A stretch of 64,000 nt of DNA, from positions 124,001 to 188,000 of the IMG/VR virus record IMGVR_UViG_3300035661_000001; one strand, 5' to 3'. The stretch's first letter is position 1. Every line of letters starts with the position of its first letter. Below, piece by piece: positions 5,839-59,590 of the stretch. The translations under genes were made by a program, and so were the position numbers. The notes under the pieces were generated by a model. The model was given only the letters and a program-made list of their open reading frames with translations. It was not told the origin of the DNA and searched no databases.

Positions 5839-6273
5839 ATGTTAGTATGGATAACCACGACGGACTCATTAAAAGAATTTAAGAGATTTTTAAATTCTTT
5901 ACGATGCCCTTTGTGTAATTCTCAATTAGATGGAAATATCACATTACGTGAGGCTAGTTTATATTGCGTGGGCAATAATGATGAATATCGCGGTAAATGG
6001 ACTCCTAATTCTATATTTGCCCAGACGGAAACTATCAAATATTATTATAGCGATTTTGAGTATGATATTACGATTAATCAAATCGGAAATCAAATTGGAA
6101 ATCAATTTGTAACAAGAGTAATTCGTTATAATGCTGATGTATCTATCAAATATAAAAATTCAACCAGAAAAGAATTATTTGAATATACTGGGGCTAAATT
6201 AGGATTTTTCCGTAAAAGAATGGATCAAGATGTTTTCTTGAAGAAATTAAAAACATATCAGGTTTTTAAATGA
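5839..6273 (+). CDS. Zn-ribbon hypothetical protein with shared C-terminal motif
   Basis: LRCPLC; ends KLKTYQVFK. Confidence 0.7.
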   Translation: MLVWITTTDSLKEFKRFLNSLRCPLCNSQLDGNITLREASLYCVGNNDEYRGKWTPNSIFAQTETIKYYYSDFEYDITINQIGNQIGNQFVTRVIRYNADVSIKYKNSTRKELFEYTGAKLGFFRKRMDQDVFLKKLKTYQVFK

Positions 6274-6425
6274 AAATTATGAGACGTCATTTAAGAAAAG
6301 CTAAACATGAAAATCTTTTACGATTAGCAAGTTTTCTTAAACTTAGAGTTGATGGTATGTCCCATCGCCAAATATCAAGCTTGGTGTATTGGAGAATCAC
6401 TCGAAATCAAATGAACAGGCACTAA

Positions 6426-6491
6426 ATGACACCTGAGTTAAAAAAACTATTAAATAGTCTCAGATGTCCAAATAGAAAAATGTTGACTTAA
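6426..6491 (+). pseudogene. truncated paralog of 5839..6273
   Basis: MTPELKKLLNSLRCP then stops; matches KRFLNSLRCPLC. Confidence 0.5.
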
Positions 6492-6629
6492 CCGTGTTTT
6501 AAAATTATTGGTAATACCGATATATATTTTATTCGTTATTTTATTTGTAATGTAATATACATAAAACATAATTTTTTTACCTTTATTGAAGGTGGATATT
6601 ATAATAATTTATACATAGAAAGACCTAAT

Positions 6630-7547
6630 ATGTCTACAAAAAAAATTCAGCGTACTGTTATTGAAGGAGGTAGGACTGGTAGTTCCAAGTGGAACCGCCG
6701 TAACTCCCATCACACAGAACGTGCATCGGAAAGAGACTATTGTAGAAAAATCACTGTAGACAGTGAAAGATCAGAGAACGATATCTTTATCGATCCTAAA
6801 GAAAAGGTACGAAAAGAATTCAATGATAAGTTGGGTCCAATGTATCGCTGGCTTCATAGCCAGACAGGTAAAGTTTGGAACGACGTAAAATCTGAAATTC
6901 ATCAAAAATTTGATAATCGTACCACTGCCGGACGTCATATTTTATATGATCATCTTCTTTCTTCCGTAGAAGAAGTTCCAGATTTGACATACCGTAGATG
7001 GTATCGTGACGTAGATGACTATACAAGCTCCAGATATAAAAACGATTTTTATGTAGATGATGCCGGTCTATTACAGATTAAAACTTATATTCCGCACGGT
7101 CATACTGGTGTACCTAAATTCAATATACAGAGTATAATAAACTGGCTACATAATCGTGTAGTAGGAAAAGTAGGAGATAAATTTTATTGGTTTGCCCCCG
7201 TAAGCAAAAGTAAAAAGTATGGTGGAACTAATAAAGTATGGAAAATAGAGTGGAGCGATCTCCGCTGGCAATCTCATAGAGGTTTTTTAAAATTCCTGTA
7301 TGCTTATCAAAAACCAATTTATTCCTCACAAAAAAGAGATGAAGAGTCGAAATTTAGAGAAATTATTGGATATGAAACAGTCTGGCAAGCTACTATGCCT
7401 AATCTGCGTCAGGATCGTAAATTAAATGACAAAGAATTGATTTTCTGGAATTCAATGCCTGAGTGGTATCAGAATAAAGTTTTGGAACGGTCTCCGACCC
7501 ATCCCCAAAACTTAACGCCAAAATTCGATAGTTACTATTACTATTAA
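6630..7547 (+). CDS. basic hypothetical protein
   Basis: 305 aa ORF. Confidence 0.75.
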   Translation: MSTKKIQRTVIEGGRTGSSKWNRRNSHHTERASERDYCRKITVDSERSENDIFIDPKEKVRKEFNDKLGPMYRWLHSQTGKVWNDVKSEIHQKFDNRTTAGRHILYDHLLSSVEEVPDLTYRRWYRDVDDYTSSRYKNDFYVDDAGLLQIKTYIPHGHTGVPKFNIQSIINWLHNRVVGKVGDKFYWFAPVSKSKKYGGTNKVWKIEWSDLRWQSHRGFLKFLYAYQKPIYSSQKRDEESKFREIIGYETVWQATMPNLRQDRKLNDKELIFWNSMPEWYQNKVLERSPTHPQNLTPKFDSYYYY

Positions 7548-7604
7548 ATATGATTCTTCTTAAATCACAGTGAGAATAAGGTATGCATATGCAAACATTT
7601 TCAT

Positions 7605-8141
7605 ATGGCATATGCTGATGATTTTAAAATCTGGGGTCCTTATAAGAAAAAAAATGGACGTCAAATAGTAATAGTTGTAAATCACAACGGTAAAAAAAGA
7701 ACAGTTTCCTATCCTAAATGGATAATGGAATGCCAATTAGGTCGTCAATTAGATCCTGATAAAGAAACAGTTGATCATTATGATTCTAATTTTGATAACA
7801 ATAATTTAGATAATTTACGTATTGTTGAACGATCTCAGCATTCTGGTGACGATACCCGTCGTGTTAAACATGTTAAGTTCAACTGCGCCTGGTGTGATAA
7901 AGAATTTGAAAGATCGCCACGTTTAATAAGAGATAAGGCTAAGAAAAATAAAGCTGGACCTTTTTGTGGTAGAGGTTGTGCAGGAAAGTATTCGCGTAAG
8001 CTACAGCTTAAATTAATAGATAAATTTGATAGCCAGAAAGCTATTGACAGTGAGTACTATAAAAGAAAATATGTTACAGCATCTGTTTGTATAGATGTAA
8101 ACGATATTTTTATTGATCATTATTGTGATATTTGGGAGTAA
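7605..8141 (+). CDS. HNH-family protein with C-terminal Zn finger
   Basis: ETVDHYDSNFDNNNLDNLRIV..H; CAWC..FCGRGC. Confidence 0.75.
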   Translation: MAYADDFKIWGPYKKKNGRQIVIVVNHNGKKRTVSYPKWIMECQLGRQLDPDKETVDHYDSNFDNNNLDNLRIVERSQHSGDDTRRVKHVKFNCAWCDKEFERSPRLIRDKAKKNKAGPFCGRGCAGKYSRKLQLKLIDKFDSQKAIDSEYYKRKYVTASVCIDVNDIFIDHYCDIWE

Positions 8142-8459
8142 ATTAAATTGGAACTATTTGAAATTTTACATGGTGTAAGTGATTGTTCCATGGATAGAAC
8201 AATTGTATGTTCTCATAATTGTATGGGAAATCATTATTTTATTACATGGGACTATCATGTGACATTTGAACTTTGGGGCGTAGGATTAAAAGGCGGATTT
8301 AATTTAATTAAAGATTTCACATATCCACGCGTAGATTATGGGATGACCTATGATGATGCTACTATTTATGGCGAAGAGCTTTTTGAAGAGTGGTTAAAGT
8401 CATTAGATACTGACGACGACAAATAATTGTGATGTTAGTATTAACTTGCCACATATAAT

Positions 8460-9194: not shown

Positions 9195-9232
9195 ATGAAA
9201 ATCTCAGAAGAAATTATTTTAAATTCTTAATC

Positions 9233-9704: not shown

Positions 9705-10229
9705 ATGGCTAAACTTGAGATAGAAAGAAAGTTTTTGGTTAATTTCCCATCCTCTTGGTCAGACTTAGCGGAGATGTTTGATGGATTGATTGATGTTAAA
9801 AGAATCACTCAAACATATTTGAAACCAGATGGAAAAGAACCATCTGCTAGAGTTAGAAAAACAGTTGAAGGATTAACAGGGGATACGGAAACTGTTTATC
9901 ATTTCAACCAAAAGAAATTGGTTGAATCTGGTGTTAACGAAGAAACCGAATATAAAATATCAGAAAGCAAATATAACAAACTGTTAAAAACTATTCATCC
10001 TGATAAAGTAACTCTTGAAAAAACAAGATTTGTATTTGATTATGAAGACCAGGTGTTTGAACTAGATGTTTTTAAAGGTGCTCTTAAAGGATTAGTAATT
10101 CTAGAAATAGAATTAAAAGATAAAAATCAGAAAGTGAACCTTCCTCCTTTCTTAAAAATTATTGAAGAAGTTACTAAGGATGATAGATTTAACAATTTTG
10201 AATTGGCTTCTACGCATAATCATGTATGA
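9705..10229 (+). CDS. CYTH domain protein (triphosphate tunnel metalloenzyme)
   Basis: EIERKFLV, ITQTYL, KTRFVF, FELDVF, LEIEL motifs. Confidence 0.9.
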   Translation: MAKLEIERKFLVNFPSSWSDLAEMFDGLIDVKRITQTYLKPDGKEPSARVRKTVEGLTGDTETVYHFNQKKLVESGVNEETEYKISESKYNKLLKTIHPDKVTLEKTRFVFDYEDQVFELDVFKGALKGLVILEIELKDKNQKVNLPPFLKIIEEVTKDDRFNNFELASTHNHV

Positions 10230-11068
10230 TTCTCGGAGCATACATGAAATATTTATACAAGATAACTAATTTATTAAATAACAAAGTTTATATTGGTCAA
10301 TCATATTCTGAAACAGAAAGATGGCGTCAGCATAAATATTGTGCGCGGTCAAAACCAAAACAATATATTGACCGAACTATGAAAAAATATGGTATATCAA
10401 ATTTCATTTATGAAGTGATAGCAATTGCTTTATCGCAAGAAGATACCGATTTTACTGAAATTGAATTGATAAAACAGTTTAATAGTCAAGATAGAAATTT
10501 TGGATACAATATAAGTCCTGGCGGAGATAAAATTTGGAATGAAGGATTGCCCAAAGAAAAACACCCGATGTTTGGTAGGCATCATTCCGAAGAATCTAAA
10601 AAGAAAATTTCTGAAGCTAATTCAGGTAAGTTAGTCGGACCCTGTACTGAGGAAAGAAAAAGAAAAATTTCTGAAGCAAATAAAGGAAAAACTTTTTCTT
10701 CAATACATAAGAAGAAACTAAGTGATGCAAAATTAGGAAAATCTCGTGAAAAAATGTCCGAAGAAGTCAGGCAAAAAATTGCAAAAGCAAATACTGGTAA
10801 AACGCAATCAGAAGAATTAAGAAAAAAACAATCAGAACAACGAATGGGGTTCCTTGTTTCAGATGAGGTTAAAAGAAAAATATCTCTTGCTCTAAAGGGC
10901 GAAAACGGTCCGAATTCTAAGCTATCAAACATTCAATGTTTAGAGATTATAGAAAAGAAAAAGAATGGTATTTCAGCCGTGAATTTAGCTATCGAATATA
11001 AAGTATCAAAAAAGACAATTCATAATATTGTCAAAAAAGGTATAAATTATTATGAGTCTAGAAACTGA
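10226..11068 (+). CDS. GIY-YIG homing endonuclease with NUMOD3 repeats
   Basis: YLYKITN..KVYIGQS..RW..H; GYN; HSEESKKKISEA repeats; C-terminal HTH. Confidence 0.9.
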   Translation: MILGAYMKYLYKITNLLNNKVYIGQSYSETERWRQHKYCARSKPKQYIDRTMKKYGISNFIYEVIAIALSQEDTDFTEIELIKQFNSQDRNFGYNISPGGDKIWNEGLPKEKHPMFGRHHSEESKKKISEANSGKLVGPCTEERKRKISEANKGKTFSSIHKKKLSDAKLGKSREKMSEEVRQKIAKANTGKTQSEELRKKQSEQRMGFLVSDEVKRKISLALKGENGPNSKLSNIQCLEIIEKKKNGISAVNLAIEYKVSKKTIHNIVKKGINYYESRN

Positions 11069-11254: not shown

Positions 11255-11764
11255 ATGCGTGAGTGGTTGATATATAATTTGATATGGAAAAATATCAAAG
11301 ACAATCAAATTGTGTGTGTGTGTAGTGTTTGTTTAATAGAAATTTATAGAAGACCATTTCAAATTGCAAAAGGTCCTGTATACTGCTCTCATGAGTGTAA
11401 AGGTAAATCACAGCAAAAATTACACAAATGTACTATGTGTGATAATCAAATAAAAGCGGGTTTACATAAAAAAACTTGTAGTAGGGCTTGTGCAAATAAA
11501 CAAAAAATTGGTTTAAGTTATGGTCAGCTCGGAAGACCAATAAAAGATAAAGTAAAAAGTTTAAATGAACTTAGAAAAAGAGTCGTTGATTTACGAGGGT
11601 ATAAGTGCGAAAGATGTAATTATTCAAAATTCCAAATTTTGGAGTTGCATCATAAAATAGAGAAATCAAAAGGTGGCTCCGATGATATAGATAATTTGGA
11701 ATTAATATGTCCTAATTGTCATGCAGAAGAGCATTGTTTAAGAAGATTAAGGAATGGTGTGTGA
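11255..11764 (+). CDS. HNH endonuclease with Zn fingers; natural start probably ATG 11284, shifted by a (TG)n run
   Basis: CERC..ELHH..KSKGGSDDIDNLELICPNCHAEEH; 3' end overlaps tRNA-Ser. Confidence 0.8.
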   Translation: MREWLIYNLIWKNIKDNQIVCVCSVCLIEIYRRPFQIAKGPVYCSHECKGKSQQKLHKCTMCDNQIKAGLHKKTCSRACANKQKIGLSYGQLGRPIKDKVKSLNELRKRVVDLRGYKCERCNYSKFQILELHHKIEKSKGGSDDIDNLELICPNCHAEEHCLRRLRNGV

Positions 11765-11981: not shown

Positions 11982-12893
11982 ATGAGTAAACATGCCGTTC
12001 TAGTTGGTTGTGCTATTGGAGATTCTTTAGGTCTTTCTTTTGAAATGAAAGGTTGGTCATACCAACCTTTGTTAGATTGGAATGGCGCTTTTACTCCTGG
12101 AGGAACTTTTTGGAAAGGTCAGGCGGGTCAGTATACCGATGATACTATGATGAGCTTGGCTTTGGCTCGCAGCTTAACACGTAATGGCAAGTATGTCCCA
12201 TCGGATGTGGCTCAAGGATATTTAGAATGGTATCTATCTGGAAATACTCGTGGCATCGGGGCGACTACTGCTCAGGCAATGCACAATTTAAAAATTGAAA
12301 TTCCATGGGACCAAAGTGGTGTTGTTGGAGATAAAGTTGCAGGTAATGGAACGGCTATGAGAGTAGCTCCTCTTGGCATGGCTTATCGTCACAATTTAAT
12401 TGATCTGATTGATTTTGCTCAGACAGACGCATCAATTACTCATAATTCTCCAGAGCCTAAAGCTGGTAGTATGGCAATAGCTTTAGGAACAGCTCTTTTG
12501 AGCCATCGAAATCTGATGCCAGAAGAAGTATTAGAATCAGTAATTAATGTAATTCCAGATTCTATTGTTAAAAACAAATTGGTTTTATGCCGCCTTCATT
12601 TAAAAGAAGGTACGGATGAACGTGCCGCTTTAATTGAAATTGGTTCAGCTGGATATGTGCCGGAAACTGTTGCGGCGGCATTTTATTGTCTCATTGCTGG
12701 TAATAACTATAAAGAGGTAGTTATTAAGGCAGTAAAAGCTGGTGGTGATACTGATACAACTGCTGCTATCGCCGGGGCTATGGCTGGAGCATTTTATGGT
12801 CTAGACGGTATTCCAGATGAATATAAAGATGGTGTAGAAAATTTTGAAGAGTTATGTTCTTTAGATGAGCAACTTGTCAACATTGAGATATAG
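11982..12893 (+). CDS. ADP-ribosylglycohydrolase (DraG/ARH family)
   Basis: AIGDSLG, YTDDT, GNGTAMR, ITH, GGDTDT motifs. Confidence 0.95.
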   Translation: MSKHAVLVGCAIGDSLGLSFEMKGWSYQPLLDWNGAFTPGGTFWKGQAGQYTDDTMMSLALARSLTRNGKYVPSDVAQGYLEWYLSGNTRGIGATTAQAMHNLKIEIPWDQSGVVGDKVAGNGTAMRVAPLGMAYRHNLIDLIDFAQTDASITHNSPEPKAGSMAIALGTALLSHRNLMPEEVLESVINVIPDSIVKNKLVLCRLHLKEGTDERAALIEIGSAGYVPETVAAAFYCLIAGNNYKEVVIKAVKAGGDTDTTAAIAGAMAGAFYGLDGIPDEYKDGVENFEELCSLDEQLVNIEI

Positions 12894-14885: not shown

Positions 14886-15170
14886 ATGAACATTCCTCTT
14901 CAATACATTTCAGAAATATATGATATTTTATGCGAATACGATGAAAAACCAATGTTATCAAAAGAAACCTTTTTTAGTTTTTGTTCCAAAGGTTTAATTT
15001 TTGATTATAGTTATCATTGTAATCATTGTGAATTAATTTGCACAAAACCTTTTAATTGTTCAGTAACAATGTTAGGATTAATAAAAATGCCAGAACCTAA
15101 ATTTAAAGAGTTAAACAGAAAACTTAAGAATTTTTCAACTAAATATCAAAAAACTTTAGCATTCTGGTAA
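14886..15170 (+). CDS. hypothetical protein with shared C-terminal motif
   Basis: ends KYQKTLAFW. Confidence 0.65.
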   Translation: MNIPLQYISEIYDILCEYDEKPMLSKETFFSFCSKGLIFDYSYHCNHCELICTKPFNCSVTMLGLIKMPEPKFKELNRKLKNFSTKYQKTLAFW

Positions 15171-15173: not shown

Positions 15174-15557
15174 ATGTCAGAAAATATGTTTGAGTATCTG
15201 AATGTTAATCGTTCAGACACTCCTCGAATAACAGTGAAATTTGATTCAAAAAAAGATATTAATAGTTTTTTACAGCAATTGATTGAAATTAATGGAGAAT
15301 CAAATACTTGTATATTTTTTGTTGGTCATTTTCTTTGTTTGATGGAATTATCAACAACATCTAATAATATGATTTTTTGGATTGCAGAAGATGAGTCTCC
15401 TCAACTCCGTGATTTAACAAAAGATTCAAAATTTGATAATTTTGAATGGATGAAATATTATCAAATTGAGGAGAAAGTATTTGAAATGCCTTTATCTGAA
15501 TTGTATGAAATAATTCAACACTTGCTTAGAATTAATAAATTAAAATCTTTTTTATGA
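15174..15557 (+). CDS. hypothetical protein with shared C-terminal motif
   Basis: ends RINKLKSFL. Confidence 0.7.
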   Translation: MSENMFEYLNVNRSDTPRITVKFDSKKDINSFLQQLIEINGESNTCIFFVGHFLCLMELSTTSNNMIFWIAEDESPQLRDLTKDSKFDNFEWMKYYQIEEKVFEMPLSELYEIIQHLLRINKLKSFL

Positions 15558-15880
15558 GTTCCTCAAAAAAGTTAATCAGAAACAAATTTAGAGATGATTG
15601 TTTTAAACGAGATAATTATCAGTGCGTGATGTGTAAATTAAAATCTTCAAAAGAAAAATCTCAAGAAGATCTTGATGCTCATCATATTACTAATCGTACC
15701 GAAATGCCAAATGGTGGGTATGTAAAAGATAATGGAATTTCTTTATGTGCAAATTATCATATCAAAGCCGAAGAATATCATTCAACCGGAGTAGCTGTCC
15801 CAGGGTTTTCAATTGATGATTTGTATACAGCAATTAAATCATCACATGCACAAGCACTTGTAGCAAGTGAAAAGTTATGA
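15554..15880 (+). CDS. HNH-family protein
   Basis: RDNYQCVMC..LDAHHI..NGISLCANYH (second Cys of CxxC replaced by Tyr). Confidence 0.75.
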   Translation: MSSSKKLIRNKFRDDCFKRDNYQCVMCKLKSSKEKSQEDLDAHHITNRTEMPNGGYVKDNGISLCANYHIKAEEYHSTGVAVPGFSIDDLYTAIKSSHAQALVASEKL

Positions 15881-16296
15881 AAAATTTATCGTTTGAAGAC
15901 CTAGTTTCATTAAATGAAAATAATATTCTTGAATTCCTTTATGGAATGTATCCATTTAATATGGAAGCCTTGCAAGAAAAAAAACTACATACACTTACTT
16001 CATTTAAGATTAGCAATTCTTTTACATTTAAAGTATACGCCCCAACAGACTTGTCTTTTTCAAAAGTGGAAAAGATTAAAGCACATGTATATGAAATAAA
16101 TAAAAAATCATTTTATAATCCAGCATTTGAAGGATCTCAATTATTAAATGTAAAAAAAGATAATATATTTAATAGGACAGAATGGCAAGATTTATTTTTG
16201 GATGATTGGCGTTCCGCCGGAATTTTAAGTCCCGCACAATTATTAGGTATGATGAGATATACTGCCAGATTGTGTAGGCTTAGAGTATTTGAATAA
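15877..16296 (+). CDS. hypothetical protein with shared C-terminal motif
   Basis: ends RLCRLRVFE. Confidence 0.7.
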   Translation: MKNLSFEDLVSLNENNILEFLYGMYPFNMEALQEKKLHTLTSFKISNSFTFKVYAPTDLSFSKVEKIKAHVYEINKKSFYNPAFEGSQLLNVKKDNIFNRTEWQDLFLDDWRSAGILSPAQLLGMMRYTARLCRLRVFE

Positions 16297-18186: not shown

Positions 18187-18551
18187 ATATTATAGTTTTA
18201 AAACAAGAATTAGGATACCAAGTTTCTTGGGATAAAAATAGTGATACTGTTTTTACTTCTCATAATAATAAGATTATTCCTCAAAAATGGGAACATTGTT
18301 CATGTATTAAAAATTTAGAATGTGGCACTATACCTGATAAATATATAATTCATCAGTATCTTGACGAAGATGAAGAAATAAATTGGGACTGCCCTATAGA
18401 ATTAAAATTACACAATGCTTCTAAAATAGATGAAATTTCTTTAATAGAAGCATTGTGTTTTACTTGTAATTACAAAAACATTACTTTATTGAATGAGTTA
18501 CGTCATGGTCATTCTAAATTAAAAGAATTATTATATAAATTCAAAACTTGA
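18183..18551 (+). CDS. hypothetical protein
   Basis: 122 aa ORF, start overlaps upstream stop. Confidence 0.6.
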   Translation: MNIIVLKQELGYQVSWDKNSDTVFTSHNNKIIPQKWEHCSCIKNLECGTIPDKYIIHQYLDEDEEINWDCPIELKLHNASKIDEISLIEALCFTCNYKNITLLNELRHGHSKLKELLYKFKT

Positions 18552-19479
18552 AAATACCAGTGATATGACCCCATGTTTCACCTGTAATAATTTTTTTGAT
18601 TGCTCCGCGGCTCACATTAAATTTGGTAGCTAATTCTGTTTGATTCAAACTACTAGATTGATATAAAGAAACTATTTCAAGAACATTATCATTTGTCAAT
18701 TTAACTTGTGAATGATTTTCTCCCTTTGCTGTTATGGTTCTTTTCTTATATTTTTTATCTTTGTTTAAAGAATTGCCCACGGCAAAACAACCAGAATTAA
18801 TAATATGCGTTCCTTTATTATAAGGAATCATTCCTGGTTTAAAAGATGTCTGATTAGATTTACATAATCCTTTAGAACCTTTATTCCAACCAAGATATTT
18901 TTTACCTTCTTTGGATTTTTTAATATTGTAAATCCTTTCAGAAGTATGATTGATTCCAGTTAATTTTTTGGAAATTTTCTGATTAATATCATTTTTTTTC
19001 TCATCGGTCCAGGCAGATTTAGTTTCTTTAATTTTTGAAATTGTTTCAGATTTTTCTTCTGAAGTTTTTTTAGAATGAGCTTCGGATATAGAGTTAGAAA
19101 CCCTTTCTTTAAAAGAAGGATCTGCCCAATGGTTTCTCATGGCTTGTTTGAAATCTTCCGATTTAGGAGCGACTGAGCCTCCAAGAGAAACATTATAACC
19201 TTTCATATTAGAAATATGAGATTGTTCTTGATCAATGATTAATTCTTCTGATTCGTTTGCCGCTTGTTGATCCAAGCAAGAGGCAATTATTTCAAATAAA
19301 AAATTAACAGCGTCATGTTTTTTCATAGCACTGTTAATTTTCATTGATGGAAATTCTTTTTCAGATTCTCTTTTATGCTGAGACCATCTTTTATTTGGAT
19401 ATTGAGTTTGACCAATATAAATTTTTTGATTGATTAAATTTGTGATTTTGTATATGTAGTGCATTTTGCCTCCACACAT
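18541..19479 (-). CDS. GIY-YIG homing endonuclease (NUMOD repeats, HTH)
   Basis: YIYKITN..IYIGQT..RW.QH; GYN; C-terminal KLT..V..I..LA.KFNVS HTH. Confidence 0.9.
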   Translation of the reverse strand: MCGGKMHYIYKITNLINQKIYIGQTQYPNKRWSQHKRESEKEFPSMKINSAMKKHDAVNFLFEIIASCLDQQAANESEELIIDQEQSHISNMKGYNVSLGGSVAPKSEDFKQAMRNHWADPSFKERVSNSISEAHSKKTSEEKSETISKIKETKSAWTDEKKNDINQKISKKLTGINHTSERIYNIKKSKEGKKYLGWNKGSKGLCKSNQTSFKPGMIPYNKGTHIINSGCFAVGNSLNKDKKYKKRTITAKGENHSQVKLTNDNVLEIVSLYQSSSLNQTELATKFNVSRGAIKKIITGETWGHITGIFKF

Positions 19480-25854: not shown

Positions 25855-25928
25855 TGGGAGATCGTTCAATGGCAGGACAGCGGATTCTGAATCCGTGAAT
25901 CTGAGTTCGAGTCTCAGTCTCCCAACCA
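25855..25928 (+). tRNA. tRNA-Gln (CTG)
   Basis: tgggaga/tctccca; gcgga-TT CTG AA-tccgt; ACCA. Confidence 0.92.
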
Positions 25929-26301
25929 TGATATTAAAGTACAAAATACAAGATTTAGATTTATCTATTTTCAAAAAACATTCATTTCATTATTTATCTA
26001 GTATGAAAAAACTAGGTCTTGAAAAAATAGAATTTCATGTGGTTCTTGATACATTTGAAATTTTTATTAAAGCATTAGGGGCGCCCGATGAATGTTGGAT
26101 TTATATAGAAGATAAAGGCACAACAATAAAACCTTTGTCTGATCCAAGATTTTGTAATTTTAAAGTGATTCGTGAAATTTTTAAAGGTCCCACAGCATTG
26201 ACGATTTTTTCAAACAAAGATCCTAAAACTTTTACTGATCAATTCTGTAAATATTAATTGAAGCTGTTGAAAAGATTAATAAATTAAAATCATTCTGGTA
26301 A
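25928..26301 (+). CDS. hypothetical protein with shared C-terminal motif (1-nt frameshift near 26250)
   Basis: ATG overlaps tRNA 3' end; adding one A at tgtaaa restores ..ILIEAVEKINKLKSFW*. Confidence 0.6.
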
Positions 26302-36725: not shown

Positions 36726-37118
36726 ATGAGTAAGCAATGCCGCGTCTGTGATTTATCCAAAAGAGGTTTCCCTGAATATTACGGAAGCTGTGAAGAAATT
36801 ACGATAGATTTTAAATGCCTTATGTGTAAAGGTGTTAATAATGTTATACACCATGCTAATGACAGTGTTTTCACGGGTCAAATATTTGAATGTAATATTT
36901 GTCATAATTATATTCAATATTATGATGATGATGATATGCTTCTATATAAATATGAATTTTATTATGACGAATTATTAATTGTTAATGATTTTGAATCAAA
37001 ACAAACGCATATTTCTTTTGACCCTTTATACGAAGCAGTTATTACATTACCATTTATTGAATTTTCAGATAAAGATCGTTTCTTCAAGAAAATTAAATCC
37101 TTAATCATTTTTTCGTGA
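36726..37118 (+). CDS. Zn-ribbon hypothetical protein with shared C-terminal motif
   Basis: Three CxxC; LPFI..; ends KIKSLIIFS. Confidence 0.7.
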   Translation: MSKQCRVCDLSKRGFPEYYGSCEEITIDFKCLMCKGVNNVIHHANDSVFTGQIFECNICHNYIQYYDDDDMLLYKYEFYYDELLIVNDFESKQTHISFDPLYEAVITLPFIEFSDKDRFFKKIKSLIIFS

Positions 37119-41285: not shown

Positions 41286-41525
41286 TTGATAAAATTAAAG
41301 ATCATGCTTATAAAATGGGCGGCATGTCTGGAAATTCCATATATGAAGTTTGGCATTATGATGCTGAGTCACCGCAATGATGGTTCCGCATATACAATGT
41401 ATGAATTATCGTTACCAGGTGATGAAATAAGTTATCACCGAGAATGGTGGCACATGGGAAAGAAACTCAATTGTTCTTCACAAAAAGAATTTGAGAAACT
41501 ATTGAAGTTGAAAGTATTTTGGTAA
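41286..41525 (+). CDS. hypothetical protein with shared C-terminal motif
   Basis: ends KLLKLKVFW. Confidence 0.6.
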   Translation: MIKLKIMLIKWAACLEIPYMKFGIMMLSHRNDGSAYTMYELSLPGDEISYHREWWHMGKKLNCSSQKEFEKLLKLKVFW

Positions 41526-42520: not shown

Positions 42521-42835
42521 ATGAATACAGTGATATTGATAGCTTCGATCTACGGGCTTGTATTTTTGATTAAAGAAACTGATGGTCCATGGGGAACGAT
42601 CAGTTGGTTTAGAAACAAATTAATGAACAATAAGTTTGTAGGAGTATTTTTCTACAAATTACTATCTTGTTATTTTTGCTCTGGTTGTCATGCCGGTTGG
42701 ATGGTCTATTTGTTAAGCGCCTCATACCATGAATGGTCTGTAAACAATTTTGTTTTATGGATCTTGGCTGGTGGAGCTATTAGTTTTATATTGAATTTGA
42801 TTGTAGAAAAATTAAGCAATCAGTCGGAGATATGA
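42521..42835 (+). CDS. small membrane protein (DUF1360-like)
   Basis: Hydrophobic segments; DGP..FR..LLSCYFC.G. Confidence 0.6.
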   Translation: MNTVILIASIYGLVFLIKETDGPWGTISWFRNKLMNNKFVGVFFYKLLSCYFCSGCHAGWMVYLLSASYHEWSVNNFVLWILAGGAISFILNLIVEKLSNQSEI

Positions 42836-43224
42836 TGGACTCATATGCGCTTTTTGAAGATATCATTTTTAATGATCTAGATGATAATTGCCCTTACAAC
42901 AACTCTTCAAATTACGAAGATTCTACTATTAAATATAATGATAATAATGTCAGAATTGTGGCTTCATCATTAGATTTTTGTTATGACATAACAACTGAAA
43001 AATATAGTGTTGTATGGTATGTCTCACCAACAGACGAGATAATAGTTTACGGGCGCGAATCTAAAACACATTTGCTCCAGTGTGCAAAAATATTTGATAT
43101 GTCTTACTTAGCAGAAATAGAAGATAATTCAGTTAACCCAGGCAAACTAGAAATTTTATACAGTTGTTCTGAACTTGTTGATAAACAAATAGATAGGTTG
43201 TTGAATTTAAAAGCATTTTTATGA
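42832..43224 (+). CDS. hypothetical protein with shared C-terminal motif
   Basis: ends RLLNLKAFL. Confidence 0.7.
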   Translation: MMDSYALFEDIIFNDLDDNCPYNNSSNYEDSTIKYNDNNVRIVASSLDFCYDITTEKYSVVWYVSPTDEIIVYGRESKTHLLQCAKIFDMSYLAEIEDNSVNPGKLEILYSCSELVDKQIDRLLNLKAFL

Positions 43225-46252: not shown

Positions 46253-46837
46253 ATGAATAATTTACAAGAAGTTTGGGAGCATTGTTTATTTTGTCCTCTA
46301 TGTCAAGACGTTTGTCGAGAGATGCATATGGCTCCTTTTTTAAAAGGAGCATTAATAGATAATATTAACAAACAAAATAATACTCTTGAATTTGATTGTC
46401 AAATCACTATAGTAAAAAAATCTTCCAAAAACATAAAAATTCATTATGTTATTGATCTAATTAATAATTCTTTTGAATCAAAAACACTTGATCCTAGTGA
46501 TGAGATGACAATAATTAATATGTCTGTAGGTATACAAGGCATATGTAAAAAATGTGAAGGCACTCTTTCCATATCTTCATCATTTGATATGGAAATCAAA
46601 TCTAAAACTATTTCAAATTTTGAAATAGCTAAAGATAGTGTAACTTTATTTGATGAAAATAATTATTATTGCATTACAGTTTTGAACTATTCAAAACAAT
46701 TATTAGTATCAAAATCATCTGATAAAGATTCTGGGCACTTCATTTCTGGAGCTATTATTCTGCCTTTTATAAATTTGGATTTTGCTAATCCAAAAGCTGT
46801 AATTTCAAAAATTAAAACTTTACTACTTTTTTCATAA
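46253..46837 (+). CDS. Zn-ribbon hypothetical protein with shared C-terminal motif
   Basis: CPLC, CKKC; LPFI; ends KIKTLLLFS. Confidence 0.72.
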   Translation: MNNLQEVWEHCLFCPLCQDVCREMHMAPFLKGALIDNINKQNNTLEFDCQITIVKKSSKNIKIHYVIDLINNSFESKTLDPSDEMTIINMSVGIQGICKKCEGTLSISSSFDMEIKSKTISNFEIAKDSVTLFDENNYYCITVLNYSKQLLVSKSSDKDSGHFISGAIILPFINLDFANPKAVISKIKTLLLFS

Positions 46838-48572: not shown

Positions 48573-48884
48573 ATGAAATGTAAATTTTGTACTTCAGAAC
48601 TTGAAGTTAAGCGTTTTCAATATGTAGATTATATGATATGTAGTCATCATAAACCCTCAAAAGTAGTATATAGATATGTAGCACCATATGGTGATAAATG
48701 GACTATTACTCATGGTGATTATAGTTTGTACTATAATAAAGGTAGAACACTTTTTCGAAAAATAAATGAAAAATCCGAAAAATCACAAGAATTTTATACG
48801 ATCATTAAAAGATTTGATCATGAATTAAATATTAAACCCGAAGATTTTGGTAAAAAAATACCAACATTATTAACATTTTTATGA
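48573..48884 (+). CDS. Zn-ribbon protein with shared C-terminal motif
   Basis: MKCKFC..C..H; IKPEDF; ends KIPTLLTFL. Confidence 0.72.
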   Translation: MKCKFCTSELEVKRFQYVDYMICSHHKPSKVVYRYVAPYGDKWTITHGDYSLYYNKGRTLFRKINEKSEKSQEFYTIIKRFDHELNIKPEDFGKKIPTLLTFL

Positions 48885-49174
48885 ATTGTAATTTTTGTAA
48901 AAGAGGTACTGTTCCTCATATTGTAAAAGTCAGTGGAGTATATAAAACATTTTATCAATGTTTTCGACATCCTAAATTAAGGGTTTCGTGGAAAACACCA
49001 GGAGTATTTGGAATCTCTAATGGTTCTTATAGAATAAGAAATGTTCCTGGTGGAAAATTCTATTTAGATAGATTACTGCCTAGTTTAAAAGTGTTAATGA
49101 GATTAGAAAGTGATCCTAAAGTAACACCTGAGAATTTTGAAAAGAAATTGAAAGTTCTACTGGCATTTTCGTGA
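48881..49174 (+). CDS. Zn-ribbon protein with shared C-terminal motif
   Basis: MNCNFC..C..H; VTPENF; ends KLKVLLAFS. Confidence 0.72.
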   Translation: MNCNFCKRGTVPHIVKVSGVYKTFYQCFRHPKLRVSWKTPGVFGISNGSYRIRNVPGGKFYLDRLLPSLKVLMRLESDPKVTPENFEKKLKVLLAFS

Positions 49175-49594: not shown

Positions 49595-49918
49595 ATGAAA
49601 AATAATTTTAAATGTACTTTTTGTAATAAAGCATGTAAGTTTTCTAAAAGAAAGAAAAAGCATTATTGCAATAACCATTTAATTATAGTATGTTATACTA
49701 TATAATATGGCGATCCCAAAGAAGTAAATTATTATGAATTAATATCTGATGAATTTCGCGCTGTAATAACAGATCATGAATATCAACAATATACAAGTAT
49801 ATTTAATGAAAATATTTCTGATGTCAAATATAAAAAAATATTTACCTTGCCATATGTCGTAAATATTACTCCTGACAATTTTAAAGAAAAAATCAAAACA
49901 CTAATAACATTTAGCTGA
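49595..49918 (+). pseudogene. Zn-ribbon paralog with shared C-terminal motif and in-frame TAA at 49703
   Basis: MKNNFKCTFC..C..H..*..ITPDNFKEKIKTLITFS in a single frame. Confidence 0.65.
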
Positions 49919-50394: not shown

Positions 50395-51108
50395 ATGGAT
50401 AATATGAAATTATCAATTCAAGAAATAATCAAAATTTATCATGAAGTTAAAAGTATTCGTAAAACTGCAACATTATCTGGATATTCCAAATCTGGTGTGG
50501 AATATTTATTAAAGAAAAATAATATAAAATTATTTTCAAAAAATAGAAATGGTGATGAAAATTCTTCGCGCAAAGCAATTGAAAATTTAAATATTAATGA
50601 TCCAAGAAAATTAGTGCGTGATCCAATATATATGTTTGAGCTTTATGTTCAGAATAAAATGTCTATACCTGAAATAGCTAATAAATTACAAATAAGTAAT
50701 ACGACAGTAATTACTGGTTTAAATCAATGTGGCATAAAAAGAAGATCTAAAAAAGAAGCTTTAAAAGGTAAGTCGCGTCCAAATGTACAAGGTTCAAAAA
50801 ATATAAATTGGAGAGGCGGCATTACTGGTTGGCGTAAATTGGCACGAGGCAGATTAAATGAACATTTTGTAAAACCTATTATGGAAAGAGATAATTTTAA
50901 TTGCCAATGGTGTTTTTCTAAAAAAAATATAGTAGTACATCATCATGTAAGATCATTTATGGAAATTGTAAATATTGTTCGTCAACGCATTAATGAATTA
51001 AATATTGAAGATTTTGTAAATGAAATAGTTAAAGAGCATAAATTAAAAGACGGCATTACAATTTGTAAAATTTGCCATGATAATTTTCATAAGGAACATG
51101 GAAAATGA
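50395..51108 (+). CDS. HTH-containing HNH endonuclease
   Basis: NWRGG; RDNFNCQWC..VHHH..GITICKICH..FH. Confidence 0.8.
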   Translation: MDNMKLSIQEIIKIYHEVKSIRKTATLSGYSKSGVEYLLKKNNIKLFSKNRNGDENSSRKAIENLNINDPRKLVRDPIYMFELYVQNKMSIPEIANKLQISNTTVITGLNQCGIKRRSKKEALKGKSRPNVQGSKNINWRGGITGWRKLARGRLNEHFVKPIMERDNFNCQWCFSKKNIVVHHHVRSFMEIVNIVRQRINELNIEDFVNEIVKEHKLKDGITICKICHDNFHKEHGK

Positions 51109-53481: not shown

Positions 53482-53949
53482 ATGAAGTATTCTAAAGAAA
53501 TATTAGAGAAAATAGCAAAGAAATCCGTTTCTTATCAACAAGTAATGAGAGAGTTAGGATTGAAAATTAGTGGTGGAAGTAGTTCTTACCTAAAATCCAG
53601 ATTCAAACTCTACAATATAGATACTTCGCATTTCACAGGACAGGCTCACAATCGTGGAAAAGTTTCTAATCTTAAAATAAATCATGAAGATATTTTAGTT
53701 TTAGATCGTTTTTGTGGTCGTAGAGATCATGGATGGAGAATTAAACAGGCGCTTATTGAATCTGGTGTTGAAGAAAAATGTGCGTTATGTTTTATCGGTC
53801 CTCAGTGGAATGATAAAAAATTGGTTTTACAAATAGATCATATTGATGGTAATGGGTTAGACAATCGCAAGGAAAATCTAAGATTCTTATGCCCTAATTG
53901 CCATTCTCAAACAGATAATTATTGTTTTAAAAATATTAAATTATGTTAA
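53482..53949 (+). CDS. HNH endonuclease
   Basis: LQIDHIDGNGLDNRKENLRFLCPNCHSQT. Confidence 0.9.
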   Translation: MKYSKEILEKIAKKSVSYQQVMRELGLKISGGSSSYLKSRFKLYNIDTSHFTGQAHNRGKVSNLKINHEDILVLDRFCGRRDHGWRIKQALIESGVEEKCALCFIGPQWNDKKLVLQIDHIDGNGLDNRKENLRFLCPNCHSQTDNYCFKNIKLC

Positions 53950-55941: not shown

Positions 55942-57078
55942 ATGGCGAATAACAACACTCAAATGGCAAGTTCAGATTTCAATCTTGAAAGACTCAACAC
56001 CAAAGACCTCGCGGAACATGTTGCTTCATCAATTGATATTGGTGGTAATATCGCAATTTTTGGTCGTAGAGGAACTGGTAAAACTGAAATTTCCAAACAA
56101 GAAATTAAGAAGTCTGAATTACAAGAAGTGTATATCAACTTATCCGTTTTGGAAAGAGTAGATATGGGAGGCTATCCAGACATCATGGGTCGAGCCTCAG
56201 AAGAAGAAAAACGTAGAAAGTTCGTTGACTTCTTGCTGCCCAAATTCTATGAGCCAATGCTTGTAGGTAAAAGAGGCGTAGTCGCTCTCTTAGATGAAGT
56301 TGATAAAGCTGATCCAAGTTTGTGGGCACCTCTTTTGGAGTTCACTCAGTTTAAATCTATCAATGGCAATCCCTTACCTAATCTGCAAGCAATTATCATG
56401 ACTGGAAATTTGATTAGCGAAGGTGGTGCAAGACCAAGCTTGCCCTTGTTGGATAGAGCTGAAAAGTATTTGGTAGAAGCAGATGCTACTTCTTGGTTGG
56501 AATGGGCTGGTAAATCAGGACATATTCATCCTTCTATTACCGCATATATTTTAGATCATCCTAAGGATCTTTTCGGAGCTGTAGATCCAGAAGATCGTTA
56601 TGCAGATCCTTCACCTCGTGGCTGGCACCGAGCATCCGATATTCTTAACAAAGGTGAAGCGAAGGGTTGGTCACCAGTCCTGTTGAATAAGAAAGTTTGC
56701 GGTTGTATTGGTAAAGATGCTGGTATTGCATACAGCAATTATTATGAACACTATCAGCAACTGCTACCTATGGTAGAAGACATTTATCATGGTAAGGATG
56801 TATCAAAACGCTATGAAGCAATGGAGCCTACCAAGAAATTGGTTGCCTGTATGATTACTTGTGCCCGGCTGGCAACTCAGCTAGATCAGTCAAAAGGTAA
56901 AGACATTCCAGAGTCTGTTGGAAATGTTGGTAAATTCTTACAGAAAGTTTCTTCGGAAAATGTATTGGTAACTGTTAGAAGCCAAGTTCGGATCGATCGT
57001 ATCATTGATTATAATTTGGATGAGCATCCTGATTGGGAGTCTATCATGGCTAAAATCAACAAACAAGTAGATGACTGA
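55942..57078 (+). CDS. MoxR-like AAA+ ATPase
   Basis: Walker A GRRGTGKT, Walker B LLDEVD, TGN, LLDR, PSPRGW. Confidence 0.9.
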   Translation: MANNNTQMASSDFNLERLNTKDLAEHVASSIDIGGNIAIFGRRGTGKTEISKQEIKKSELQEVYINLSVLERVDMGGYPDIMGRASEEEKRRKFVDFLLPKFYEPMLVGKRGVVALLDEVDKADPSLWAPLLEFTQFKSINGNPLPNLQAIIMTGNLISEGGARPSLPLLDRAEKYLVEADATSWLEWAGKSGHIHPSITAYILDHPKDLFGAVDPEDRYADPSPRGWHRASDILNKGEAKGWSPVLLNKKVCGCIGKDAGIAYSNYYEHYQQLLPMVEDIYHGKDVSKRYEAMEPTKKLVACMITCARLATQLDQSKGKDIPESVGNVGKFLQKVSSENVLVTVRSQVRIDRIIDYNLDEHPDWESIMAKINKQVDD

Positions 57079-57113
57079 TACGTCACTCTGATGTATGATC
57101 CTAATGGAGAAAT

Positions 57114-58763: not shown

Positions 58764-58765
58764 AA

Positions 58766-58808
58766 TAAAAGAAACGGACAGAAGAATTCTTCTGTCCATT
58801 TCTTTTTG
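58766..58808 (+). terminator. intrinsic terminator
   Basis: ggacagaag-aatt-cttctgtcc hairpin followed by atttcttttt. Confidence 0.7.
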
Positions 58809-58819
58809 AAAGTTCCAAT

Positions 58820-59257
58820 ATGAAAAGTGATAAATATCAAATTTACAAAGAGCCTGTTTCCGATATAGAAGAATATTTATTACTTGTCGCATTATTTGTA
58901 ACAGATCCTAAAATGAATCCTAACCAGGATTTAGATTTTTTCGTAGAATTAATATTTGATAGTAAATGGGGTCATATCCACACTAGGTTTTGTCGGTACT
59001 TTTTAGTAAAAAATGAAGATTATCTTTTTACATTTGAAGCTATTTCTAAATTTTTAGAATTTTTATCTGTAGATTCAATTTTATTTACTAATGATTTTTT
59101 CCATACCTTGTGTTCAGATTACCCTTCTGTTATGGTTGAAAAGGTATTTAATAATTTACCAAATTATTTGAAACATCAATCATTAGAAGTTCTTGTTAAA
59201 TACGACAAAATAGTAAATGAAATTCCAAGAATTAAAACTTACATGGTATTTTCATGA
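58820..59257 (+). CDS. hypothetical protein with shared C-terminal motif
   Basis: ends RIKTYMVFS. Confidence 0.7.
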   Translation: MKSDKYQIYKEPVSDIEEYLLLVALFVTDPKMNPNQDLDFFVELIFDSKWGHIHTRFCRYFLVKNEDYLFTFEAISKFLEFLSVDSILFTNDFFHTLCSDYPSVMVEKVFNNLPNYLKHQSLEVLVKYDKIVNEIPRIKTYMVFS

Positions 59258-59302
59258 TTAAAAATTATACAATAGAATTTAGGCGATATCAAATCAGCCA
59301 TT

Positions 59303-59590
59303 ATGAATATAAAAAGTTTAAAACCATATTTACATTATGTAGTTGACAATGAATTGGGTAAAAATAAAAAATTTGAATTCATTTCTTTAAAAGGTAAAAT
59401 TTACAATTTACTATTTTATAAGTTAAATGAGTTAGATCCACCATTTGAAGTTCTTTGCATCATAGATACGAAAAATAATTATAGGCATTTTTATGAGATT
59501 TCATGTGGAAAGATTATTTGGGATAATAAAATATCTAAACAATTAAAAAATTACTGTGATAGAGTTATGGGAATGTTCGTGTTTCTATAA
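59303..59590 (+). CDS. hypothetical protein with shared C-terminal motif
   Basis: ends RVMGMFVFL. Confidence 0.65.
   Translation: MNIKSLKPYLHYVVDNELGKNKKFEFISLKGKIYNLLFYKLNELDPPFEVLCIIDTKNNYRHFYEISCGKIIWDNKISKQLKNYCDRVMGMFVFL

What the first reader, a model, noticed from the sequence alone, without database searches (positions are those of the whole stretch)
5839..59590. Shared 9-residue C-terminal tag on at least 14 small proteins: candidate undescribed docking or targeting system
Seen in sequence, last 9 residues (stop coordinate): KLKTYQVFK (6273), KYQKTLAFW (15170), RINKLKSFL (15557), RLCRLRVFE (16296), KINKLKSFW (26301, after frameshift), KIKSLIIFS (37118), KLLKLKVFW (41525), RLLNLKAFL (43224), KIKTLLLFS (46837), KIPTLLTFL (48884), KLKVLLAFS (49174), KIKTLITFS (49918, pseudogene), RIKTYMVFS (59257), RVMGMFVFL (59590). 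All have K/R at -9, a hydrophobic residue at -8 and Phe at -2; 13 of 14 have a hydrophobic residue at -5. The spacing is fixed relative to the stop codon. There are two flavours, K-[IL]-K-T-[LY]-x-x-F-S and [KR]-[IL]-x-[KNR]-L-K-x-F-[LW]. The tagged proteins are 80-195 aa orphans scattered over 54 kb, and none of the recognisable enzymes carry the tag. Inference: a short amphipathic helix read by one phage-encoded receptor, allowing a diverse effector repertoire to plug into a common hub. Options include a sliding-clamp motif (LxxF[WL] resembles the hydrophobic core of the PCNA PIP box; T4 gp45 partners also use C-terminal peptides), a capsid-packaging or ejection signal, import into a phage compartment, or a degron or substrate tag for the MoxR AAA+/VWA module in this window.
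Basis: partly seen in the sequence, partly recalled or inferred. Interest (0 to 1): 0.92.

Follow-up and report, generated by a model that had tools for sequence, protein, structure and literature searches.

The report
Shared C-terminal helix on phage ORFans
About one in ten genes in this stretch of a 452-kb uncultured "huge" phage ends in the same short helix ([K/R]-h-x-x-h-x-x-Phe-x-stop); the pattern is real and selected at the protein level, but it is the conserved ending of several large uncharacterised phage protein families, not yet a proven universal docking tag.

Summary
All 14 C-termini are as described. Eleven of 120 ORFs match [KR][ILVYM]xx[LYMIV]xxFx at the C-terminus, against about 0.06 expected (p ~4e-22). 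There is one internal match in 18,800 positions, and it lies inside a carrier. Synonymous codons vary, so selection acts on the peptide.

The window belongs to a 452-kb uncultured phage. The 9-mer is the end of a longer module: a short strand, an N-cap, then a 14-18-residue helix.

It is the hallmark ending of at least three unannotated families:
- A: a ~200-aa zinc-ribbon beta-meander family (window 46253; at least 394 clusters; AlphaFold pLDDT 85, tail helical).
- B: a 23-aa HRxDGPA/WYxNG hairpin-repeat family ending ...KLKAFW (window 41286; more than 6,500 proteins).
- C: ~100-aa CxxC tandem paralogs.
- Several further ORFans share only the tail.

Only 36726 is detectably homologous to A. 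Carriers occupy variable slots between conserved core genes.

My best reading is a conserved capping and self-association helix of fast-evolving small-protein families. A shared docking helix is a serious rival. No receptor was identified. PIP-box and degron definitions are not met. No Pfam, PHROG, PDB or literature match exists. Interest is moderate.

The parts
5839..6273 (+). Carrier, 144 aa, N-terminal CxxC, tail KLKTYQVFK
   Evidence: HHalign to family A aligns only the last 15 residues.
14886..15170 (+). Carrier, 94 aa, tail KYQKTLAFW (Thr at -5). First gene of a local cluster.
15174..15557 (+). Carrier, 127 aa, no CxxC, tail RINKLKSFL. Its only relative is a reading frame in the 446-kb phage (L017 3214-3879) ending ...KKLTAFL.
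15877..16296 (+). Carrier, 139 aa, tail RLCRLRVFE. It also holds the only internal motif match of the window (aa 36-44, KLHTLTSFK), so it is probably a fusion of two tagged units.
25895..26301 (+). Disrupted carrier: ORF 25895-26257 (120 aa) followed by tail KINKLKSFW, which is encoded in a different frame (26251-26301)
   Evidence: Identical in three assemblies.
36726..37118 (+). Carrier, 130 aa, three CxxC pairs, tail KIKSLIIFS. Homologue of the C-terminal half of family A.
   Evidence: blastp to 46253, E 1e-4. HMM E 1.3e-6 over 100 residues. HHalign probability 92%.
41286..41525 (+). Carrier, family B (HRxDGPA/WYxNG hairpin repeat plus ...SSQKEFEKLLKLKVFW). The likely true start is near 41343.
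42832..43224 (+). Carrier, 130 aa, tail RLLNLKAFL. A weak positional relative in L063 ends RYLNLKAFV.
46253..46837 (+). Family A founder in the window: 194 aa, a Cys4 site from two distant CxxC pairs, a beta meander, and C-terminal helix 180-193 ending KIKTLLLFS
48573..48884 (+). Family C tandem paralogue, 103 aa, N-terminal CxxC, tail KIPTLLTFL
48881..49174 (+). Family C tandem paralogue, 97 aa, N-terminal CxxC, tail KLKVLLAFS
49595..49918 (+). Family C pseudogene: CxxC piece 49595-49702, in-frame TAA at 49703-49705, then 49706-49918 ending KIKTLITFS
58820..59257 (+). Carrier, 145 aa, directly downstream of the VWA/DUF2201 gene, tail RIKTYMVFS. L055 has a family-A-like 116-aa carrier next to its MoxR gene.
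59303..59590 (+). Carrier, 95 aa, tail RVMGMFVFL (the most divergent)

Best explanation
The 'tag' is the last two turns of a conserved C-terminal module. The module has a short beta-strand (often h-x-h-P-h), an N-cap ([ST/D/P]-x-x-[ED]), and a 14-18-residue amphipathic helix. The helix has a hydrophobic residue at -12/-11, K/R at -9, hydrophobic residues at -8 and -5, Phe at -2, and one more residue before the stop. This module terminates several large, phage-restricted, unannotated families of small, mostly beta-rich proteins:
- A: zinc-ribbon beta-meander proteins of about 200 aa, plus half-size forms.
- B: 23-residue HRxDGPA/WYxNG hairpin-repeat proteins.
- C: about 100-aa CxxC tandem paralogues.
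- Further ORFans.

These genes are fast-turnover accessory genes. They duplicate in tandem, fuse, decay, and move between slots separating conserved core genes. This phage has accumulated many of them.

I infer that the helix persists while the bodies diverge because it caps and packs against the terminal hairpin of each body, and probably provides a self-association surface. On this reading it is primarily an intrinsic structural and assembly element inherited with the module. It is not a detachable address label.

Shown: enrichment, peptide-level selection, helicity, family membership, clade-wide conservation, variable gene slots.
Inferred: common descent of the module across families, and the capping/self-association role.
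For: - The motif extends beyond 9 residues. All 14 carriers have a hydrophobic residue at -12/-11 and most have an N-cap just upstream.
- The family A model is confident (pLDDT 85, pTM 0.79). The tail is helix 180-193 with block pLDDT 86-93, directly after strand 168-171 and with no linker.
- Within family A the tail is one of the three most conserved segments, alongside the Cys4 site and the N-terminal helix.
- In family B the helix takes the place of the next repeat unit, as a cap would. It is the best-predicted part of an otherwise poor model.
- Non-shared tail positions are family-specific and conserved across many phages. Family A has K-7, T-6 and S-1 at 76-84%. Family B has K-6, K-4, A-3 and W-1. 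This fits co-adaptation of each tail to its own body better than one shared reader.
- 36726 and L055_5190 are homologues of the A C-terminal half.
- BFVD hits of the A model include short 96-132-aa proteins, annotated as from uncultured Caudovirales phage, with probability 0.66-1.0.
- About half of the window carriers have an N-terminal CxxC.
- Family C members end in either FS or FL, which bridges the two 'flavours'.
- Tandem arrays, fusions with internal tails (15877; L070 4664-5152) and pseudogenes show birth-and-death evolution.
- Carriers occupy different slots in the 446-kb relative.
Against: - Bodies of 10 of 12 intact carriers show no detectable similarity to family A or to each other once the tail is removed. 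Common descent of the module is therefore inferred and not shown.
- Some carriers in the relative look all-helical by sequence (L017 7641-7919 and 7921-8202). A hairpin cap makes little sense there.
- Phe at -2 is almost invariant across families (131 of 138 in A; all window carriers). K/R at -9 is also conserved and polar. On a helical wheel these two lie side by side, away from the main hydrophobic stripe. The chain always ends one residue after Phe. These features are more typical of a specific binding epitope than of generic packing.
- I had no model coordinates, so I could not verify that the helix is buried.
- The family B model is of low confidence (pLDDT 54).
Confidence: 0.42

Rival explanations
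1. Shared docking helix. Diverse small accessory proteins use the same C-terminal helix, with an exposed K/R(-9) and Phe(-2) stripe and a free carboxylate one residue later, to bind one conserved hub. Because the B-type tail occurs in thousands of proteins from many phages, the hub would be a widely conserved host or phage protein (for example a clamp, a chaperone or unfoldase, or a Kelch propeller), not a clade-specific receptor.
For: - Extreme C-terminal specificity: 11 matches against 0.06 expected, and none internal except within a fused carrier.
- Near-invariant Phe at -2 and K/R at -9 across bodies with no detectable similarity.
- The chain always ends right after Phe-x.
- Carriers are variable accessory genes, as expected for an effector repertoire.
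- The window encodes candidate readers: two Kelch propellers, two MoxR AAA+ proteins, a VWA protein and a J-domain protein.
- L(-5)-x-h(-3)-F(-2) resembles the core of bacterial clamp-binding motifs (from memory, not tested).
Against: - No linker separates body and tail, and the tail is an integrated helix in the only confident model.
- Tail sequences are family-specific, not genome-specific.
- Relatives that keep the Kelch gene showed no tagged ORFs in their 20-kb samples (L006, L008).
Confidence: 0.33
2. Membrane-targeting amphipathic helix. The basic-plus-hydrophobic C-terminal helix lies in the plane of the inner membrane, like the MinD or FtsA C-terminal targeting sequences, and concentrates many small phage proteins at the membrane.
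For: - The tail is helical, amphipathic, Lys/Arg-rich, has Phe/Trp/Leu near the end, and sits at the extreme C-terminus.
- It occurs on many unrelated-looking small proteins.
- The resemblance to MinD-type sequences is recalled from memory.
Against: - Membrane helices tolerate F/L/W/Y/I exchange and shifts in register. Here Phe and the register are nearly invariant.
- Conserved Thr and Asn positions in family A are not expected for a membrane helix.
- The high pLDDT and compact model suggest the helix packs on the protein.
Confidence: 0.1
3. C-terminal degron or substrate tag for a protease or unfoldase (host ClpXP/Lon/Tsp, or the phage MoxR/VWA pair), which would time the removal of early proteins.
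For: - The position is fixed relative to the free C-terminus.
- Two carriers lie directly downstream of the VWA gene, and a relative has one next to MoxR.
Against: - The known C-terminal degron classes recalled from the literature (ssrA-like LAA, MuA-like basic tails) do not match.
- Degrons are normally unstructured, whereas this is a confident helix.
- Family A is a conserved core gene in a replication-type module in many phages, only some of which show MoxR nearby.
Confidence: 0.05
4. Artefact of AT-rich composition or of overlapping start/stop signals. K, I, L, F and S are common in a 32% GC genome, and the ATGA overlaps fix the last codon.
For: - GC is 0.28-0.36.
- Many carriers end xxA-TGA, overlapping the next ATG, which may bias the last residue.
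Against: - Composition and shuffles predict 0.06-0.07 matches against 11 observed.
- The internal rate is 1 in 18,700 positions.
- Synonymous codons vary, including TCN versus AGC for Ser.
- The same tail is conserved in phages of 31-48% GC.
Confidence: 0.01

Closest known systems
Terminal capping helices of repeat proteins (for example caps of MORN, LRR or ankyrin arrays)
   Same: In family B the helix replaces the next 23-residue hairpin repeat at the end of the array. In family A it follows the last strand of a beta meander. It is amphipathic, integral to the domain and has no linker.
   Different: The cap-like helix here has a nearly invariant Phe at -2, K/R at -9 and a fixed chain end. 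It recurs on bodies with no detectable similarity. MORN_2 and DUF6745 hits are partial or below threshold.
Poxvirus ankyrin-repeat proteins with the C-terminal PRANC/F-box-like domain
   Same: This is a viral multigene family with variable target-binding bodies and a conserved C-terminal element that plugs them into one host hub. It is the best analogy for the docking reading.
   Different: There is no sequence or Pfam relationship. The module here is 25-30 residues, not about 60. The host is bacterial, and no hub is known.
Clamp-binding peptides (PIP box Qxx[ILM]xx[FY][FY]; bacterial QL[SD]LF; C-terminal tails of T4 gp45 partners)
   Same: They are short, near the C-terminus, and have Leu and Phe three residues apart. 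The window is rich in replication and repair genes.
   Different: There is no Gln at the defining position in 14 of 14 carriers. An aromatic at -1 occurs in only 3 of 14. The tail is predicted as a packed helix without a flexible linker. No clamp gene was seen in the sampled DNA.
C-terminal membrane-targeting sequences of MinD/FtsA
   Same: They are extreme C-terminal, basic, amphipathic helices of about 10-15 residues.
   Different: The register is strict, Phe is invariant and polar positions are conserved. The helix is predicted to pack on the domain.
Targeting peptides for protein shells (T4 capsid-targeting sequence; encapsulin cargo-loading peptides)
   Same: One short terminal peptide is shared by otherwise unrelated cargo proteins of a virus or virus-like shell.
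   Different: By established knowledge, the T4 signal is N-terminal and cleaved, and encapsulin peptides are Gly/Ser-rich extended tails after a linker. Neither resembles this helix. No virion data are available.

Membership tests
PIP box (PCNA-interacting peptide) | Gln at position 1, an aliphatic residue at position 4, and aromatic residues at positions 7 and 8 (Qxx[ILM]xx[FY][FY]) | tested here: not met
   With Phe(-2) as position 7, position 1 is -8 (I/L/V/Y in 14 of 14, never Q). Position 8 (-1) is aromatic in 3 of 14.
Bacterial beta-clamp-binding motif | QL[SD]LF or QLxLxL consensus | tested here: not met
   L/Y/M at -5 and F at -2 fit the xLxhF core. Position -6 is T/K/N/S/V/G, never Q. 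Position -3 is often A/S/T. Actual binding is not testable here.
Bacterial beta-clamp-binding motif | Flexible, exposed peptide able to adopt an extended conformation | tested here: inconclusive
   The tail is helical with pLDDT 86-93 in the family A model. In the poor B model the last three residues are coil. No coordinates were available.
HbYX-type C-terminal docking tails | Hydrophobic-Tyr-X at the free C-terminus | tested here: not met
   The penultimate residue is Phe in 14 of 14 and Tyr in 0 of 14. In family A it is F 131, L 5, Y 2 of 138.
ssrA-like or MuA-like C-terminal degrons | Terminal LAA-type or basic RRKKAI-type ending (recalled from the literature) | tested here: not met
   No carrier ends in these patterns.
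   Met for 36726 and 46253, and for L055_5190. Met weakly for 48573 and 48881 (blastp E 1e-3). Not met for the other carriers with tails removed. Structural comparison was possible for family A only.
Family A (new; zinc-ribbon beta-meander, about 200 aa) | Full-length profile match, two distant CxxC pairs, and a tail of the form [KR][IL]KT[LIM][IL]xFS | tested here: met
   Window 46253-46837 aligns end to end with 8 and then 138 relatives. The Cys columns are 99-100% conserved.
Family B (new; HRxDGPA/WYxNG 23-residue hairpin repeats) | At least one repeat plus the ...SQEEFE[RK]hhKhK[AV]FW ending | tested here: met
   Window 41286-41525 matches L070, L005 and L152 with E 1e-13 to 5e-7 and aligns in A4. 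The family has more than 6,568 members.
Pfam MORN_2 / DUF6745 | Score at or above the Pfam gathering threshold | tested here: not met
   MORN_2 scores 12-15 bits against a cutoff of 29.6. DUF6745 matches only profile positions 63-103 of 206 and is above the cutoff in some relatives only.
MinD/FtsA-type membrane-targeting sequence | C-terminal amphipathic basic helix that is free to insert into the bilayer | tested here: inconclusive
   Amphipathic and basic: yes. Freedom from the body could not be assessed without coordinates. The high pLDDT suggests packing.
Any curated family (Pfam, PHROGs, PDB sequences) | Significant hit | tested here: not met
   Foldseek against PDB gave TM below 0.21.

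The most novel reading that the evidence does not exclude
The helix is a portable docking element. Thousands of otherwise unrelated small proteins of environmental (mostly huge) phages would use [KR]-h-x-x-h-x-x-F-x-COOH to plug into one conserved hub, either a host machine or a conserved phage protein. That would be a phage counterpart of the poxvirus PRANC system and a general handle for finding and sorting phage effectors.
Probability: 0.3. Interest if true: 0.85.

Novelty: new variant of a known kind. Interest (0 to 1): 0.52.

Why it matters
Huge phages carry hundreds of small ORFans with no clue to function. This work shows that a sizeable fraction of them share one strongly constrained C-terminal module. 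That fraction is about 10% of ORFs in this window, at least 394 clusters of one family, and more than 6,500 proteins of another. None of these are in Pfam, PHROGs, the PDB or the searched literature.

If the module is a cap or assembly helix, it defines a new, very large superfamily of diversifying phage proteins and gives a sequence handle for annotating them. If it is a docking helix, a single pull-down with a 20-residue peptide would identify a hub that many phage accessory proteins converge on. It would also turn a list of orphans into a testable effector repertoire.

Tried and rejected
- DNA-level motif (promoter, terminator or translational-coupling signal): rejected because synonymous codons vary.
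- Composition artefact: rejected.
- Close cultured relatives: none. blastn and tblastn against phage records gave nothing useful for the carriers.
- Word-indexed homologue searches on 36726 and 42832 returned only the query proteins themselves.
The first DNA pattern had too few fixed bases.
- PDB sequence and fold searches for families A and B found nothing.
- AlphaFold of family B (6 sequences) gave pLDDT 54. It was too poor for a fold search, so the planned test 'is B a different known fold?' stayed open.
- A GTDB genome scan with the family A tail pattern found no real members among 121 hits.
- Kelch as receptor: the Kelch gene is kept in relatives whose 20-kb samples show no tags, so there is no support from co-occurrence.
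- Cultured jumbo phages PA5oct (gp156) and Atu_ph07 (gp088) have B-type repeats but not the tail.
- Literature searches for the motif strings, DUF6745 and jumbo-phage C-terminal motifs found nothing relevant.


Full report
**What the window is.** The window has 32% GC and its genes lie almost entirely on one strand. It is part of IMG/VR contig 3300035661_000001 (451,956 bp). The same genome was assembled independently as a 451,948-bp JGI contig and a 349-kb contig. No cultured phage is close.

Recognisable genes in the window include:
- translation and chaperone-type genes: MetRS, EF-Ts, a J-domain protein;
- NAD and ADP-ribose genes: NAMPT, NUDIX, ADP-ribosylglycohydrolase, NADAR;
- DNA genes: a UvrD-type helicase, NAD-dependent ligase, a Dam-type methylase, RNase HII;
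- two metallophosphoesterases, two Kelch propellers, two MoxR-like ATPases, and a DUF2201 VWA protein;
- many GIY-YIG and HNH endonucleases.

None of these ends in the motif.

**Checking the observation.** In a mechanical, non-overlapping set of 120 ORFs, 11 end in [KR][ILVYM]xx[LYMIV]xxFx. The other three cases are 15170 (Thr at -5), the frameshifted 26301 and the interrupted 49918.
- The same pattern occurs once in about 18,700 internal positions.
- Composition predicts 0.058 matches. In 2000 per-protein shuffles the mean is 0.07 and the maximum 2. The binomial p is 4e-22.
- The single internal match lies in carrier 15877 (aa 36-44). It looks like the tail of a former upstream unit fused to the next one.
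- Codon usage at the conserved residues varies (Ser as TCA, TCG or AGC). This excludes a nucleotide-level signal.
- The frameshift at 26257 and the in-frame TAA at 49703-49705 are present in three assemblies.

**The tag is longer than nine residues.** When the last 24 residues are aligned, every carrier has a hydrophobic or aromatic residue at -12 or -11. Most have a helix N-cap ([ST/P/D]-x-x-[ED]) a few residues further up. Several have a short h-x-h-P-h strand before that. The unit is a strand-plus-helix module of about 25-30 residues that follows the body directly, with no Gly/Ser/Pro-rich linker.

**Family A.** I scanned IMG/VR for DNA encoding K-I-K-T-L-x-x-F-[ST]-stop. This returned 53 hits. 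Most fall in very short open frames and look like chance matches. Eleven loci, including two copies of the window genome, carry a 190-220-aa ORF orthologous to window 46253-46837. These come from large contigs of 31-48% GC. The gene sits in conserved synteny, followed by a 67-aa gene and a metallophosphoesterase.
- A profile of eight members found 394 representative clusters at E <= 1e-3 in 1.84 billion representatives. Nearly all are full length and end exactly at the profile's last position.
- In 138 of them the tail reads [KR]-[IL]-K-T-[LIM]-[IL]-x-F-S, with Phe at -2 in 131.
- The tail is one of the three most conserved segments, with the Cys4 site (two distant CxxC pairs) and an N-terminal helix.
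- AlphaFold gives a confident model (pLDDT 85, pTM 0.79): an N-terminal helix, a beta meander, and a C-terminal helix 180-193 that is the tag.
- There is no Pfam, PHROG or PDB relative.
- BFVD contains only uncharacterised proteins annotated as from uncultured Caudovirales phage. These include short 96-132-aa ones that match part of the fold.
- 36726 and a 116-aa protein next to MoxR in L055 are homologues of the C-terminal half.

**Family B.** Window 41286-41525 and its relatives consist of HRxDGPA...WYxNG hairpin repeats with a 23-residue period, like MORN repeats. They are followed by ...[CS]xSQEEFE[RK]hhKhK[AV]FW.
- A profile search found more than 6,568 proteins among the 8,000 candidates scored. 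Many come from contigs of 200-540 kb, and a few from bacterial records.
- 68 of the top 120 hits end in the motif.
- Pfam sees only a partial DUF6745 or sub-threshold MORN_2 signal.
- Cultured jumbo phages PA5oct and Atu_ph07 have the repeats without this tail.
- The AlphaFold model was poor (pLDDT 54). It placed a helix at the tail with the best local confidence.
- One relative (L070 4664-5152) is a head-to-tail fusion that keeps an internal tail.

**Family C and the rest.** 48573, 48881 and the pseudogene 49595-49918 form a tandem array of about 100-aa CxxC proteins. A 394-kb relative has a similar triple array. Its members end in FS or FL, which bridges the two 'flavours'.

The remaining carriers are 5839, 14886, 15174, 15877, 42832, 58820, 59303 and the 25895 ORF.
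- They share nothing detectable with families A, B or C, or with each other, once the tail is removed.
- Carriers in the 446-kb relative include two that look helical by sequence, plus a 347-aa protein.
- None has a Pfam domain.

**Genomic behaviour.** In the comparison with the 446-kb relative, core genes are collinear but tagged genes sit in different slots. For example, a tagged gene lies before the ligase in one genome and after it in the other, and likewise for the 104-aa gene. Some are present in only one genome. Outside the window the same genome has further carriers: a 195-aa protein ending TLKTLLLFS, a tandem pair ending RLKKLLIFT and KLKKLLIFA, and a weak case. The density there is lower than in the window. 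More distant relatives sampled around the helicase showed none in 20 kb.

**Interpretation.**

Arguments for an intrinsic capping or assembly helix:
- It has no linker.
- It is an integral, confidently predicted helix in family A.
- It replaces a repeat unit in family B.
- Each family conserves its own residues at the non-shared tail positions across many phages. This suggests co-adaptation of the tail to its own body.

Arguments for a docking epitope:
- Phe(-2) is nearly invariant and K/R(-9) is conserved across bodies with no detectable similarity.
- These two residues lie next to each other on the helix, beside the main hydrophobic stripe and not within it.
- The chain always ends one residue later.
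- The carriers behave like a variable effector set.

I could not inspect coordinates or run multimer predictions, so the two readings cannot be separated here. I rank the intrinsic-module reading first (0.42) and docking second (0.33). Membrane targeting (0.10) and a degron (0.05) follow. Composition artefacts are excluded.

**Comparison with known systems.** The PIP box, the bacterial clamp-binding consensus, HbYX and the known C-terminal degrons each fail on a defining residue. The families themselves are absent from Pfam, PHROGs, the PDB and the searched literature.

**Verdict.** The feature is real and strongly selected. It was previously undescribed, and it marks very large families of small phage proteins.

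Noticed in passing
window 15877-16296 (aa 36-44, nt 15982-16008); L070 4664-5152: Two carriers contain an internal copy of the tail followed by a second unit that ends in another tail. These look like tandem tagged genes fused by loss of a stop codon. The 15877 copy is the only internal motif match in the whole window.
   Followed up: partly
window 25895-26301 and 49595-49918: Two decaying carriers. One has its tail shifted into another frame after 26257. The other is split by an in-frame TAA at 49703-49705. Both lesions are identical in three independent assemblies, so they are real alleles and not assembly errors. I did not assess programmed frameshifting or readthrough.
   Followed up: partly
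window 11982-12893, 20835-22531, 24483-25475, 30900-32279, 44519-44962; L312 8115-8681: The phage carries an unusual set of host-like functions: MetRS, EF-Ts and a ribosome recycling factor (the last just outside the window). It also has an NAD/ADP-ribose cluster of NAMPT, NUDIX, ADP-ribosylglycohydrolase and NADAR. That cluster is suggestive of NAD+ replenishment against NAD-depleting defences.
   Followed up: no
window 19504-20424 (-) and 35431-36645 (+): There are two Kelch beta-propeller proteins, which are rare in phages. The second is conserved after the helicase in four relatives. Its best Pfam match is the KLHDC2/KLHL20-type propeller model. The eukaryotic namesakes of that model read C-terminal degrons (from memory). 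This is a speculative candidate reader for the tails.
   Followed up: partly
window 55942-57078 / 62224-63330 and 60038-60376 / 61621-61962: Duplicated gene pairs: two MoxR-like AAA+ proteins (35% identity) and two IscA-type Fe-S assembly proteins (36% identity). A GIY-YIG endonuclease and an RNase T gene lie between the two IscA-type genes.
   Followed up: no
window 3739-4332, 10226-11068, 11255-11764, 18541-19479, 28012-28530, 44963-45613, 50395-51108, 53482-53949, 60373-61011: The window has a very high load of free-standing homing-endonuclease-like genes (GIY-YIG/NUMOD3 and HNH paralogues; LAGLIDADG just outside the window). Like the tagged genes, they are interspersed between core genes.
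   Followed up: no
L303 20385-20624 (about 9 kb right of the window): A 79-aa protein has a precomputed Pfam hit to Acb5 (an anti-CBASS family), next to an RNA ligase and a polynucleotide kinase/phosphatase. This looks like an anti-defence and RNA-repair neighbourhood.
   Followed up: no
whole window: TAG is almost unused as a stop codon (3 of about 100 plus-strand ORFs). Most stops are TAA, or TGA overlapping the next ATG. I saw no sign of stop-codon recoding, but I ran no dedicated test.
   Followed up: no
window 39047-39856; L005 18418-19224; L008 19030-19836: The metallophosphoesterase also has Phe at -2 (ending ...IFI or ...MFI) in several relatives, but it lacks the rest of the motif. 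This is a conserved family ending unrelated to the tag. It shows that Phe(-2) alone is not diagnostic.
   Followed up: partly
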